DNA of 64,000 bases, taken from NCBI RefSeq assembly GCF_000315625.1, contig NW_005434611.1:259698-323697 (forward strand), given 5' to 3'. Source of the DNA: Guillardia theta CCMP2712 (taxonomy: Eukaryota > Protista > Cryptophyta). The notes beneath the pieces were generated by a model. The model did no database searches. It saw only the letters and a list, made by a program, of their open reading frames with translations, and was not told the DNA's origin. Made by a program: the position numbers and the translations under genes. Shown in pieces: positions 15,799 through 20,940 of the stretch (position 1 is the first letter of the stretch; each line of letters opens with the position of its first letter).

Positions 15799-17760
15799 AT
15801 GGAGGAGGAGCGGGGGAGGAGGAGAGGGGGCGCGCAGGGGAACGAGAATGGAGATGGAGTAGAGTGAGTTCAAGGATGGTCGGTGAGGGCGAAAGGAGTA
15901 CTGTATTGACTAGTTGGAGAGAATCCCCTTGGTTCCAGGCGCAGGGATGATTCCTGATGAGCTTGTGGTTTAGCCCAAAAGTTGATACAGCAATACCATG
16001 CAGGAGCAGAAGTTTGTGGAGAGATCGAACGGATCCATGTCAACGATATCACACCCGAAGACTTCGAAAAGAATTACATCAGCAGGTGATGGAGCCCCCT
16101 GCTCCATTTCATTGTATCACTGAAATCTGGAATCCAGAGGGATGCCCGTGGTGTTGACAGGGGCCATGGACGGATGGCCTGCATGGAAAGTAGGATCGCG
16201 TAAAGTCTGAAACCATGATGCATCTCTGATTCATCCAAACTCACCCGAAAGTACCCAGTGGAGCCTGCAATGGTTTCGACAGACGTATGGGAACGTAGTA
16301 TGCCCTATCGATATTGGAGGTACCTGCTGGCTCAAGTATGATGCCAAATGATTTGGATGTCAGGAAAGAAAACAACCATGACACTGGATGAATACAGTAA
16401 GAAATACTTCCTATTCCTGAGCTTCAATTTTCACCGTTCGAAGAAAACTTCATTGGCATGACGCCATATACTAGTATCGAAATTCCAAGAGTACGAAAAC
16501 CTACCTGCTGGTTCTTCGACTCCCTACCTGAGAACAGTGAGAAAAATGCTGATTTGAGCAGAATGCCTGAGAGCTTCGCAGTGGTACTTCTCCGATGATA
16601 TCCCCGAACTTGTGGAAGACTTCTCGCCTCCCGATCATTTTCATGCAAACGACATGTTCGAGAACCTCTCACCCGACCTCAGGCCTCCTTTCCGAGTGAG
16701 GCAAAGATGTTGTTGGGGACTAGAGGCTGACAGATGTGCACAGTGGCTGTTCTTTGGGCCGAAGGGAACAGAATCGAAACTTCATGTTGATATTTGGGAG
16801 ACAGATGCTTGTAAGGTGGTTTTCTCAAAACACAAAACAATCACGATATTCACAGGGCTGGGCATGCTTGAAGGGGAAAAACTATTCACACTGTATCATC
16901 CTGCTCATCGCAAATACATTGAGAGGGAAGAAAATGAATGGGTGGATCTATTGTAGGCGGATCACTCTCTGGATTGTTGAACAGTGACCATTTCAATCTA
17001 GAAAACCTCCCAATAGTCACAAGTTTCCTGATCAATCAAAGGCGGTCCCTGCTCAAACCATCTTGAAAGTAAGATCTGGAACCTTCCTTCTGATGTGATT
17101 TCAGTGAACGTGGTACAGGCCGGCGAGATCATTTACATCCCTCGCAAATGGCCACATCATGCGCTGGCTCTCTCAGAATCCATCTCTCTTACTCTCAACT
17201 TTGCCCCACTGTGTGTCAGAAAAAGCATTCTCAAGCACGTGGTCCCCTACACACGGAACAGAGCAAGGTGTCAGGTCAGACCTGCAGAGACTATATGAAA
17301 CTGCAGCCCCGTCTCATACAGCCTTGTGGCAGATGGTGCTGGGAAGAAGATTGAAGGCTTCAGACAACCTCATGCAGGTCCGTATCGAATGAGAGGCAAA
17401 ATGCCGGTGTGCTTAGGGGGGATTCCGGGGGGCAAGGAGGTAGTACGGAATTGAGCAAGTTGACTGGCTTGCCTGAGTGAGAATCGTGCTTCAAATCGCT
17501 GAGTATGGAATTTTCAGCTCTGCATACATGGAGGAACAATCAAATATGGAGACATGTGCTCCGACGACGCTGCAGTAGCAAGGAACCCAATGCAAGCTGC
17601 GGATGATCCTGCCGCATCAGCATCGCCCGATGAAGATGGCGACGCGGCGCCGGTAACTTAGTAAACTTCCGTCTGTGACAGCGAGGGACTCCCGATTAAA
17701 GTGAAGTCAGAGCATAACGAGGAAAATGGCAGATCACTGAGCCAGAGAGTCAGGAGCTGA
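15799..17760 (+). CDS. JmjC-domain 2OG/Fe(II) oxygenase (JMJD6/JMJD4-like); multi-exon
   Basis: Spliced motifs IERIHVNDITPEDFEKNYI, PVVLTGAMDGWPAW, WLFFGPKGTESKLHVD (HxD), GEKLFTLYHP and AGEIIYIPRKWPHHALALSESISLTLNF (third Fe ligand His). Confidence 0.88.
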
Positions 17761-17769
17761 GCCGTGTCG

Positions 17770-18060
17770 GACCGTTGAGCACCGTGTGACTGTCAGCGGC
17801 GAGCCGCGGACTCGGCCCGGCCGGGACCGTGGGCGCCGCGGCCAGCCTCTGAGCGAGTCCGGCCCTTCCACCCGCGGCCCGGTATGATGGGCCCGGCGCC
17901 GGGGTCCCGGTATCCGGCCGCGGCGCCAGGGTGGCCCGGGGGCGTCACTGAGTTAAAAGCAGTTTCTGGACCGTGCCAATAGTGGTTGCCAAGTTGATCA
18001 CGCGCCGGTCACAAGGCGGGACCCTCGGTCACCCCTCATCTCCACCCTGACCAGTGAGCC
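17770..18060. other. GC-rich intergenic island dense in CCGG/GGCC/CCGCGG and GAGTC/TCACTG words
   Basis: e.g. ctcggcccggccgggaccgtgggcgccgcggcc, gggcccggcgccggggtcccggtatccggccgcggcgcc. Similar islands at about 3100-3300, 21270-21530, 28070-28440, 37140-37520 and 61540-61690. Confidence 0.6.
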
Positions 18061-18820: not shown

Positions 18821-18826
18821 TATATA
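18821..18826 (+). promoter_or_regulatory. TATA-like box of the Ubl-bZIP gene
   Basis: TATATA 37 nt upstream of the ATG at 18858, preceded by G-rich boxes (gggggtgggggtgg). Confidence 0.45.
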
Positions 18827-18857: not shown

Positions 18858-19631
18858 ATGCAGATTTTCTTAAAAAGCGCGAAGACCGTCACGACGCTAG
18901 TATCCCCCCACACCTCTATCCTCCACCTCAAGACTTTCCTGACGGACATCTCTCGGGTTCCTTCACGAAGCTTGAGGATCTCTTGCGGTGGAAAGGAGCT
19001 AGTAGACCACAAGTACCTCGTAGACTACGGCGTGAAGGACGGGCAGACTTTGGAGTGGACGATCCGACTGCTGGGAGGAAGAGGGGATATTGCCGAACTA
19101 TCAACAGAGTTCTCTCTAGAAGACTACGACCTGGAAGGCTGCCTTGAGCAAGAAATGGTTGCCGTGGACGAATGCTCGGGCTGGTTCGGATCTTCGGAGT
19201 CGACGGAAGAGTCGCCAACGGATTCAGCTGAGGAGATGATCGAGCCACCAGAGATGATCGCTGGGGTTGATGAGGGCTTCGATATCAACAAGGTGCTTGC
19301 AGCAGCCGCTGCTAGAGATCCTTCCATGGAGAGCATCGTGCTAGAAATACTTCCGAATGGTGAGAACGTTCCCATTTCGGTAAGCAAGACCAAGAAGGGT
19401 CTTCGCTATGACTTGGAATCGATCGAGGACGAGAGATTGAGAAAGAGGTTAGCGAAGAACCGTCTCTCAGCAGAGAAATCTCGACAAAGGCGGAAGAATC
19501 AGCTGCAGGAGCTCGAGCAGCGACTGGCAATGTTCGAAGAGCAGAACTTGATGCTGCTGAAGAAGAACGAAGCTCTTGAGCAGGAGAATGCGAATTTGCG
19601 GAACAGGTTGGGAGATGGAATGGGACTATAG
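18858..19631 (+). CDS. Intronless fusion of a 74-aa ubiquitin-like domain, an acidic region and a bZIP DNA-binding domain
   Basis: N-terminus MQIFLKS...LRISCGGKEL..DYGVKDGQTL..IRLLGG is a ubiquitin fold ending in diglycine at aa 73-74. C-terminus RKRLAKNRLSAEKSRQRRKNQLQELEQRLAMFEEQNLMLLKKNEALEQENANLRNRL has the N-x7-R basic region and heptad leucines. Confidence 0.93.
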   Translation: MQIFLKSAKTVTTLVSPHTSILHLKTFLTDISRVPSRSLRISCGGKELVDHKYLVDYGVKDGQTLEWTIRLLGGRGDIAELSTEFSLEDYDLEGCLEQEMVAVDECSGWFGSSESTEESPTDSAEEMIEPPEMIAGVDEGFDINKVLAAAAARDPSMESIVLEILPNGENVPISVSKTKKGLRYDLESIEDERLRKRLAKNRLSAEKSRQRRKNQLQELEQRLAMFEEQNLMLLKKNEALEQENANLRNRLGDGMGL

Positions 19632-20940
19632 TGTTGAGCGATTGAGTAATGAGCTTAACCAAATGGCCTGGTGGAGATGAAGAAATAACAAAACTTAAGA
19701 AAAAACAAGGATTATCCAGGATTTTTTTTATTCTTGTAGAAGTGATATGAAGTTGATTTTAAATGAAAATTCATTTTTTCTTCAAACGTCAAAGTTTTGG
19801 TGGGGAAATGTTTTTCTTCGCAGCGACTTGATCATCGGTAACTCTTCAGCCTACGAGGTAGAACAGATCTTATGGCTGCAGACCTGGAACCTCGAACGGT
19901 AGAGGTGGGAAGGCTTCCCATGTGATTCCATCAGTAGAGATAGTGCTCTGATGCTTCGAAGTATGATGGGCATCGAAAGTCACAATCAAGATCGCAGTAA
20001 CAATCATTTACATTCACAGTAGTTGTTTTGTATACTACCGCCCATCACTCACAAACTTGGAGCAGCAAAGTTACCCTCATCCCCCCATACTCCCATTACC
20101 ACCCACCCCCAGACTTGCCACCATATCTACCCCCTTGAAGCTGCTTGCAGCCCCGACTACCAAACTTGAAAAGCTGCATCGGCAGTCCCTCCCTATGCTG
20201 CTCGGTGCGGCAGTGGTTGGCGGGATGCTCATTCTTGGGGTTGTGCTTGTGGAGTTGAAGCTGACAGAGGCAGGATTTCAGGTTATTGATCTTTCACGTG
20301 TGATTGATGGAACTTGTGTTGTCCTTTGCGAGTGAAATCTCCTTGTTGCCAGAGGTATTCGTGCTTTCTGATGCCATTGTGACAGGGCTTGGATAATGTC
20401 GAGAGAGAAAATGTGAGACTATCTTATGTTTTCTTGCTGCATCATGATCTGATTCGATCTCTCCAGTCCAAAACCCCCTCCAGCTTTCAAAATGACCAGG
20501 CTCCTGCTCTGCGCGAAGAAATCAAGGAATTGCAGCGCCATGTCATGCCTTAGTTATTTCTATGTTGATCCATGTCCTTCTTAGTTGTGCATACCTCTCA
20601 TACTCATCAAGCGTTCTATGCTCAAGCGCAAAGATATCACGAACACCTTATATGTTGACGAGTTTCATGCTGGGATCTACAATGGAGAACGGATGCTAGG
20701 TGTGATTCGGATGGGAGCTCGACGCTCTTATGGGTTAATGCAGAGGTGCAGCAGCTAAGGAGCAGCTTGCATGGCGAGTTAGAGCTTGTTGGTACCATGT
20801 GATGCACTAATGTATATCTTTTCTTGTGGTGAGATTTCTATTCACGAATCATTGTGAAACTGATCATTACAATGGTAGAATGTTTGATGGAAAGTCAACT
20901 TGCACCTAAACCTTTGCATAAAATCAAATCAGAGTTTGCA

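What the first reader, a model, noticed from the sequence alone, without database searches (positions are those of the whole stretch)
18858..19631. Natural ubiquitin-fusion transcription factor: Ubl-GG|Arg-acidic-bZIP, a possible built-in N-degron timer
Seen: an intronless ORF in an otherwise intron-rich region. It encodes a 74-aa ubiquitin-fold domain ending RLLGG (nt 18858-19079), followed immediately by Arg75, an acidic region and an intact bZIP. Established: Ub/Ubl fusions such as Ub-ribosomal proteins and the 74-aa FUBI (ending RMLGG) are cleaved after GG by deubiquitylases, and N-terminal Arg is a primary destabilising residue of the Arg/N-degron pathway. Inference: cleavage would release an R-G-D-I... 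bZIP factor that is short-lived from birth, suited to pulse or immediate-early expression, plus a free divergent Ubl with a conjugatable GG. If uncleaved, the domain could act as a UFD-type degron. I do not recognise this architecture as characterised, although other ubiquitin fusions are known in algae.
Basis: partly seen in the sequence, partly recalled or inferred. Interest (0 to 1): 0.85.

Follow-up and report, generated by a model that had tools for sequence, protein, structure and literature searches.

The report
Ubiquitin-capped bZIP with conserved arginine degron
Cryptophyte algae make one transcription factor as a fusion behind ubiquitin (or a decayed ubiquitin), and all 44 intact relatives have arginine or lysine at the cut site, so trimming probably releases a protein that is marked for destruction from birth.

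Summary
Confirmed and extended. It belongs to a cryptophyte family (Hanusia, Baffinella, Proteomonas, Rhodomonas, Hemiselmis, Cryptomonas, metagenomes). Of 44 homologues with an intact di-Gly, 24 carry near-canonical ubiquitin and 19 a Ubl under 50/76 identical. The residue after GG is Arg in 40 and Lys in 4: three Arg/Lys switches on the tree and none to a non-basic residue, against 21-28 changes at each position from P3' on. Other Ub fusions have R/K there in 1 of 24. The two copies lacking GG|R have damaged Ub starts. A sister clade has Ubl(s) without GG. The genome encodes UBR1-like N-recognins and SDE2. Best reading: a DUB-cleaved precursor exposing a type-1 Arg/N-degron on a bZIP activator, a natural Ub-Arg reporter. 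It works like SDE2 (GG|K) but is ubiquitin-derived and unrelated. Cleavage and half-life are untested; the nearest lysine is far away (71st residue), and the free Arg could be a binding handle. Not in the 2019 survey of this alga's Ub fusions; the scan's word search found no earlier report.

The parts
18821..18826 (+). TATA-like box (TATATA), about 37 nt before the ATG
   Evidence: read from the sequence; function not tested
18858..19079 (+). Ubiquitin-derived Ubl, residues 1-74; 27/76 identical to this genome's ubiquitin; 2-residue deletion in the Leu8 loop; Ile44 patch lost; Arg42, Lys48 and Arg72 equivalents kept
19074..19079 (+). Di-glycine G73-G74, predicted DUB cleavage site
   Evidence: present in 44 of 46 homologues of the clade with a junction
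19080..19082 (+). Arg75 (AGA), P1' residue, predicted type-1 N-degron after cleavage
   Evidence: R 40 / K 4 of 44; codons AGA, CGT, CGC, AAG
19083..19379 (+). Acidic, lysine-poor, mostly disordered spacer (25% D+E) with aromatic and Leu residues; probable activation domain (inferred); first Lys is K145
   Evidence: no Pfam match
19380..19430 (+). Family-specific extension before the basic region (KKGLxYDL motif), predicted beta-hairpin plus short helix
   Evidence: no structural match
19431..19619 (+). bZIP basic region (N201-x7-R209) and leucine zipper
   Evidence: best solved relatives TGA3, ATF-2, CREB
19632..19786 (+). 3' UTR ending at a poly(A) site at 19786; no AUUUA pentamer

Best explanation
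The protein is a ubiquitin-type precursor. A deubiquitylase cuts after Gly74 and releases Arg75-acidic-bZIP. A start Met is not removed before Arg or Lys (established knowledge), so a fusion is the way to give a newly made protein a free basic N-terminus. UBR1/PRT6-type N-recognins bind that residue, and the bZIP activator is turned over by the Arg/N-degron pathway, so its level tracks its mRNA closely. The fusion arose once in cryptophytes from real ubiquitin. Some lineages kept canonical Ub; others, including Guillardia/Hanusia, let it decay to a pro-domain that keeps the fold and the R-L-x-G-G tail but not the ubiquitin-signalling surface. Shown: architecture, expression, family, selection on GG|R/K, reader ligases in the genome. 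Inferred: cleavage (near-certain for the canonical-Ub members, about 0.85 for this divergent copy), degradation, and a pulse-like role.
For: 44/44 basic P1' across 16 spacer clusters with median spacer identity 21% and 2.7% R+K background; parsimony changes: P1' 3 (all R/K), P2' 6, P3'-P15' 21-28. Lys arose in three separate clades. Four different codons, so the constraint is on the amino acid. Controls: R/K in 1 of 24 other Ub junctions (Fisher p about 5e-17, ignoring relatedness); other G. theta Ub fusions start with A, I, H, M or C. 24 homologues carry 68-76/76 canonical Ub, identical to G. theta Ub in many. The 18 divergent Ubls aligned keep G75/G76 18/18 and R72 17/18 but I44 0/18 and V70 2/18, with dN/dS about 0.14-0.37 in the Baffinella-like clade. 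The two copies without GG|R have a frameshifted or degenerate Ub start. The genome has a UBR-box+ClpS protein with the Asp residues that bind basic N-termini (PMC6486553) and SDE2 with GG|K. SDE2 (Lys-Gly-Gly) is a proven UBR1/2 substrate (PMC6486553).
Against: No protein-level data. An N-degron also needs a reachable lysine: the first is 71 residues in here, median 95 in the family, and 30 of 43 are beyond 60, whereas SDE2 uses a Lys 16 residues away. The acidic context may weaken the degron (own knowledge). The G. theta Ubl is only 36% identical to Ub and needs a cross-reactive DUB. In Sde2 the free N-terminal Lys is also needed for activity (PMC9508853), so conservation alone does not prove degradation. 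Positions after P2' were compared without alignment, so indels inflate their change counts.
Confidence: 0.68

Rival explanations
1. The fusion is cleaved, but the free N-terminal Arg/Lys is kept mainly as a functional handle (binding a co-activator, a UBR-box or other partner, or licensing activity), with turnover secondary.
For: S. pombe Sde2 needs its free N-terminal Lys for splicing (PMC9508853). The spacer is strikingly lysine-poor, which a pure degron would not favour. P2' is also fairly conserved (Gly 30/44).
Against: Arg/Lys interchange three times and nothing after P2' is conserved, which matches a UBR-box pocket that ignores the third side chain (PMC12304086) more than a dedicated interface. 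Not exclusive of the degron model.
Confidence: 0.17
2. This particular diverged Ubl is not cleaved and acts as an integral UBL or UFD-type degron, or a proteasome-targeting domain, as in the sister clade.
For: The Ile44 patch and Leu8 loop are lost. A sister clade with the same bZIP subfamily has one or two Ubls and no GG, including a paralogue in this genome.
Against: Residues 59-77 across the junction are identical between Guillardia and Hanusia, while the Ubl overall is 59/74. All 19 divergent Ubls keep GG|R/K. Equally divergent FUBI and SDE2 Ubls are cleaved by USP36/USP16 and USP5 (PMC10611586, PMC13572447). The Ile44 patch that proteasome receptors need is gone.
Confidence: 0.1
3. The Ub moiety is a folding or expression aid or a ubiquitin source (as for ribosomal fusions), and GG|R is a frozen accident, an RGG-like methylation motif or a splice-related signal.
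For: The fusion probably has a single origin. Ub fusions are common in this alga (PMC6332867). GGRG resembles an RGG motif.
Against: Neighbouring positions are scrambled while P1' never leaves R/K. Lys, and P2' Asp/Val/Cys/His, break a methylation motif. Codons CGT/CGC/AGA/AAG exclude a DNA-level signal. The divergent Ubls cannot supply ubiquitin, yet they keep the junction.
Confidence: 0.05

Closest known systems
SDE2/Sde2 (Ubl-GG|Lys precursor; PMC6486553, PMC9508853, PMC13572447)
   Same: N-terminal ubiquitin fold ending in di-Gly, DUB cleavage, basic P1' usually followed by Gly, and a product that is a UBR1/2 Arg/N-degron substrate (shown for SDE2, inferred here).
   Different: The partner is a bZIP transcription factor, not a splicing or replication factor. 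The leader is ubiquitin itself or derived from it (divergent-Ubl profile scores 94.6 bits on Ub against 12.8 on G. theta SDE2 Ubl). Arg predominates, there is no KGGFG motif, and it was found only in cryptophytes.
FUBI-eS30 (FAU; PMC10611586)
   Different: FUBI leads a ribosomal protein and is animal-lineage. The resemblance is convergent: a similar deletion and R74L recur independently in homologue P0192.
Algal ubiquitin fusions: Ub-NiSOD, Ub-HMG, Ub-zinc finger, Ub-L40/S27a (Sibbald 2019, PMC6332867)
   Same: Same organism and the same kind of Ub-leader precursor.
   Different: No bZIP partner is listed, and their P1' residues are His, Ala or Ile rather than R/K.
Engineered Ub-Arg-X reporters of the ubiquitin fusion technique (PMC11441550)
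   Same: Identical design: ubiquitin, GG, destabilising residue, cargo.
   Different: This is a natural, selected version on a transcription factor, and it lacks the nearby Lys-bearing linker of the reporters (own knowledge).
Cryptophyte/Goniomonas tandem-Ubl bZIP sister clade (this work)
   Same: Same bZIP subfamily with the YDL extension in the cryptophyte members, and N-terminal ubiquitin folds.
   Different: One or two Ubls ending without GG, so not cleavable in this way; the G. theta paralogue has an intron.

Membership tests
Cleavable ubiquitin/Ubl fusion precursor | N-terminal ubiquitin fold | tested here: met
   Pfam PF00240 above cut-off; model TM 0.94 to ubiquitin
Cleavable ubiquitin/Ubl fusion precursor | Conserved di-Gly exactly at the Ub G75-G76 position | tested here: met
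   two decayed exceptions among 46
Cleavable ubiquitin/Ubl fusion precursor | Actual cleavage by a DUB | not testable with these tools
   no protein data
Canonical ubiquitin (conjugatable, read by ubiquitin-binding domains) | Leu8/Ile44/His68/Val70 patch and near-invariant sequence | tested here: not met
   27/76 identity; I44S, H68E, V70T, Leu8 loop shortened. Met by 24 homologues, not by this copy.
Arg/N-degron type-1 substrate | Basic residue exposed at the new N-terminus | tested here: met
   R75; R/K in 44/44; conditional on cleavage
Arg/N-degron type-1 substrate | Accessible, unstructured N-terminal region | tested here: met
   pLDDT below 50 for residues 75-138; a prediction only
Arg/N-degron type-1 substrate | Reachable internal lysine | tested here: inconclusive
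   first Lys is the 71st residue of the fragment; family median 95
Arg/N-degron type-1 substrate | Cognate N-recognin in the organism | tested here: met
   three UBR-box genes, one with UBR box + ClpS-like domain and the DPT / CDCGD acids
Arg/N-degron type-1 substrate | P1'- and UBR-dependent short half-life | not testable with these tools
   needs chase experiments
SDE2 family | GG|KGGFG motif and SDE2 C-terminal domain | tested here: not met
   absent; the true SDE2 lies elsewhere in the genome; the Ubl is Ub-derived
bZIP transcription factor | Basic region N-x7-R followed by a leucine zipper | tested here: met
   N201...R209, Pfam PF00170, continuous helix 192-254
bZIP transcription factor | Sequence-specific DNA binding and transactivation | not testable with these tools
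   inferred from domain content

The most novel reading that the evidence does not exclude
A cryptophyte-wide transcription factor whose lifetime is hard-wired by a ubiquitin fusion that exposes an Arg/Lys N-degron, i.e. a natural Ub-Arg reporter. Its ubiquitin has decayed in many lineages, more than once, into a cleavage-only pro-domain, and it coexists with an uncleavable tandem-Ubl sister bZIP, giving two ubiquitin-fold solutions for controlling one bZIP subfamily.
Probability: 0.6. Interest if true: 0.8.

Novelty: new variant of a known kind. Interest (0 to 1): 0.72.

Why it matters
The ubiquitin fusion was invented as a laboratory device to expose chosen N-terminal residues. Natural ubiquitin fusions are usually read as ubiquitin sources or folding aids, and SDE2 is the main natural Ubl leader known to expose a basic N-degron (USP1 and TUG expose N-degrons by related di-Gly cuts, PMC8013793). 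Here real ubiquitin leads a transcription factor, and the comparative signal says the exposed basic residue is what selection keeps. The family gives a ready series, from identical-to-Ub down to about 30%-identical leaders, for asking which ubiquitin surfaces a DUB needs and how FUBI/SDE2-like leaders evolve from ubiquitin. It is also a candidate physiological Arg/N-degron substrate in a lineage where I found none described. The canonical-Ub members can be tested directly in yeast.

Tried and rejected
Full-length searches were swamped by polyubiquitin or found only Hanusia; the family appeared only with profiles of the post-Ub part (top 8000 candidates, length-limited, so counts are lower bounds). 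Origin from the SDE2 Ubl was rejected. A DNA-level or splice-signal reason for the Arg codon was rejected. A viral source was not supported: no hits in viral contigs. The ESM Atlas gave only generic bZIPs below 0.8. Foldseek on the bZIP plus extension gave nothing. The Pfam Sde2 model found nothing in the genome, but a DNA pattern did. No AUUUA elements in the 3' UTR and no full CRE or AP-1 site upstream. Four literature searches found no description of a Ub-bZIP fusion; the library lacks most subscription journals. The bZIP and Ubl trees do not resolve whether the divergent Ubls are one clade. In one search, P0167 was mis-anchored (tandem Ub) and P0124 was missed; both were corrected. The spliced paralogue on contig C31 was read exon by exon and not joined. 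Contig depth was not used as an expression measure.

Full report
Observation. Window 18858-19631 is a 257-codon frame in an 87,145,349-base, 669-contig genome. That size and an 82%-identical Hanusia phi protein point to the cryptophyte Guillardia theta; earlier scan notes name the same species. Pfam finds ubiquitin at 3-70 and bZIP at 193-249. The model shows a ubiquitin fold for 1-70, low confidence over 75-138, a small hairpin at 175-184 and a long helix at 192-254; Foldseek gives TM 0.94 to ubiquitin. The domain aligns end to end with ubiquitin, placing G73-G74 on G75-G76. Contigs from three probable RNA runs cover most of the ORF, junction included, without joints; raw RNA reads end in poly(A) at 19786; the flanking genes are spliced. 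There is no upstream in-frame ATG, and the protein starts directly with the Ub-like first strand, so it has no leader peptide.

The family. A search of 50%-identity representatives gave a few full-length relatives with true ubiquitin at the N-terminus. Profiles of the part after ubiquitin then found about 100 proteins of one bZIP subfamily, marked by a K-G-L-x-Y-D-L extension. Named sources are all cryptophytes (Hanusia, Baffinella, Proteomonas, Rhodomonas, Hemiselmis, Cryptomonas paramecium) plus Goniomonas; the rest are metagenomic, and many carry a ubiquitin identical to this genome's. The bZIP tree shows a GG-junction group of 47 rows (support 92/66, so not firm) apart from the proteins whose one or two Ubls lack GG; the Goniomonas protein is of the GG-less type. 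G. theta has one gene of each kind: this one and a tandem-Ubl paralogue on contig C31. The paralogue may be the '1.5 Ub, 409 aa hypothetical' of Sibbald et al. (its Hanusia orthologue is 406 aa); I could not verify this. No bZIP fusion is listed in that survey (PMC6332867).

The junction. Among 44 non-redundant homologues with di-Gly, P1' is Arg in 40 and Lys in 4. They fall into 16 clusters at 35% spacer identity (median pairwise identity 21%), and R+K make up 2.7% of the next 30 residues. On a tree built from the bZIP alone, P1' changes three times, always between Arg and Lys; P2' changes six times (Gly 30, Asp 8, Val 3, Cys 2, His 1); each of P3'-P15' changes 21-28 times (these columns are anchored, not aligned, so indels count). 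GG itself was part of the selection pattern, but only two full-length members of the group lack it. P0172 (GE|L) has a 13-nt duplication that shifts the frame at the start of the Ubl, and P0173 (NG|W) has a degenerate start and a 52/76 ubiquitin. P1' codons are AGA, CGT, CGC and AAG. Controls: 1 of 24 unrelated Ub junctions has R/K, and the other G. theta fusions begin with Ala, Ile, His, Met or Cys. A further 51 within-cluster variants all have Arg (not independent).

The leader. 24 members have 68-76/76 canonical ubiquitin, 19 have under 50/76 (one of these and one intermediate case are N-terminally truncated records). The 18 aligned divergent leaders keep core residues, R72 (17/18) and GG (18/18) but lose I44 (0/18), V70 (2/18) and L8 (1/18), mostly with a two-residue deletion in the Leu8 loop, the same deletion described for FUBI (PMC10611586). 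They remain under purifying selection (dN/dS about 0.14-0.37 in the Baffinella-like pairs) and derive from ubiquitin, not from SDE2's Ubl. Inference: what is kept is a folded, cleavable leader, not a ubiquitin signal.

The genome has three UBR-box genes. One has a UBR box plus ClpS-like domain like UBR1/2 and keeps the equivalents of Asp118, Asp150 and Asp153, the residues that bind the basic N-terminus of SDE2 (PMC6486553). A second scores about equally with UBR1 and plant PRT6; PRT6 binds Arg-Asp-Gly peptides (bioRxiv 2022.08.19.504472), a start seen in several homologues. SDE2 with GG|K is present, so the alga should own a DUB for diverged leaders (inference).

Mechanism. Most likely (0.68): DUB cleavage after Gly74, exposure of Arg75, UBR-dependent turnover of an acidic-activator bZIP whose basic region is closest to TGA, ATF-2 and CREB among solved structures. 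The weak point is the distance to the first lysine (71 residues here, median 95). Looping of the disordered spacer to the lysine-rich bZIP, or targeting of the dimer partner in trans, could solve this (own knowledge; Johnson 1990 is cited in PMC11441550), or the degron may be weak or conditional. The main rival (0.17) is that the free basic end is a binding handle, as the Sde2 lysine also is (PMC9508853). Non-cleavage of this copy (0.10) and a frozen accident (0.05) are less likely. Pulse or immediate-early expression is not shown.

Comparison and novelty. It works like SDE2 and is built like the laboratory Ub-Arg reporters, but it is a member of neither the SDE2 nor the FUBI family. USP1 and TUG are other di-Gly-cleaved proteins with N-degron products (PMC8013793). 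I found no paper on a ubiquitin-bZIP fusion or on a natural true-ubiquitin fusion selected for a destabilising P1' residue, within a library that lacks most subscription journals. Verdict: new variant of a known kind with strong comparative support; interest 0.72.

Noticed in passing
G000:C31:482951-484406 (L038, ATG at 966): Paralogue with two Ubl domains lacking GG, one intron and the same bZIP subfamily; conserved in Hanusia, Hemiselmis and Baffinella, with a similar protein in Goniomonas. Candidate integral-UBL transcription factor and possible dimer partner.
   Followed up: partly
L112 (G000:C37:503549): G. theta SDE2 with a Ubl ending CLGG followed by KGGFG.
   Followed up: partly
L067 (G000:C68:406232), L066 (C98:214124), L068 (C68:340372): Three UBR-box N-recognin candidates; L067 has a ClpS-like N-domain.
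   Followed up: partly
L032 (G000:C12:1038182), L028, L029, L042, L046: Other Ub/Ubl fusions in this genome: DRC4-like (GG|M), HMG (GG|A), NiSOD (GG|H), and a long frame with a Ubl ending SLGG followed by GCG.
   Followed up: partly
L106/L107 (P0172) 55-110: Expressed Rhodomonas-like copy, on 21 contigs, with a 13-nt duplication frameshifting the Ubl start and GG|R replaced by GE|L.
   Followed up: yes
P0192 and P0167: P0192: near-canonical Ub with an independent 2-residue Leu8-loop deletion and R74L. P0167: tandem Ub before the Arg junction in one record.
   Followed up: partly
L095, L096, L098, L099: A third related bZIP subgroup in metagenomes with no ubiquitin in frame.
   Followed up: no
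L103 266-600: AT-rich metagenomic contig with a related bZIP next to a helicase-like ORF; possibly giant-virus-like, not checked.
   Followed up: no
window 16612-17660 and 17780-17950: Upstream spliced gene that looks like a JmjC protein, followed by a very GC-rich block in the intergenic region.
   Followed up: no
L113 (G000:C116:33785): Leader-bearing ClpS-like protein containing GGKGGFG, probably a chance match to the SDE2 motif.
   Followed up: no
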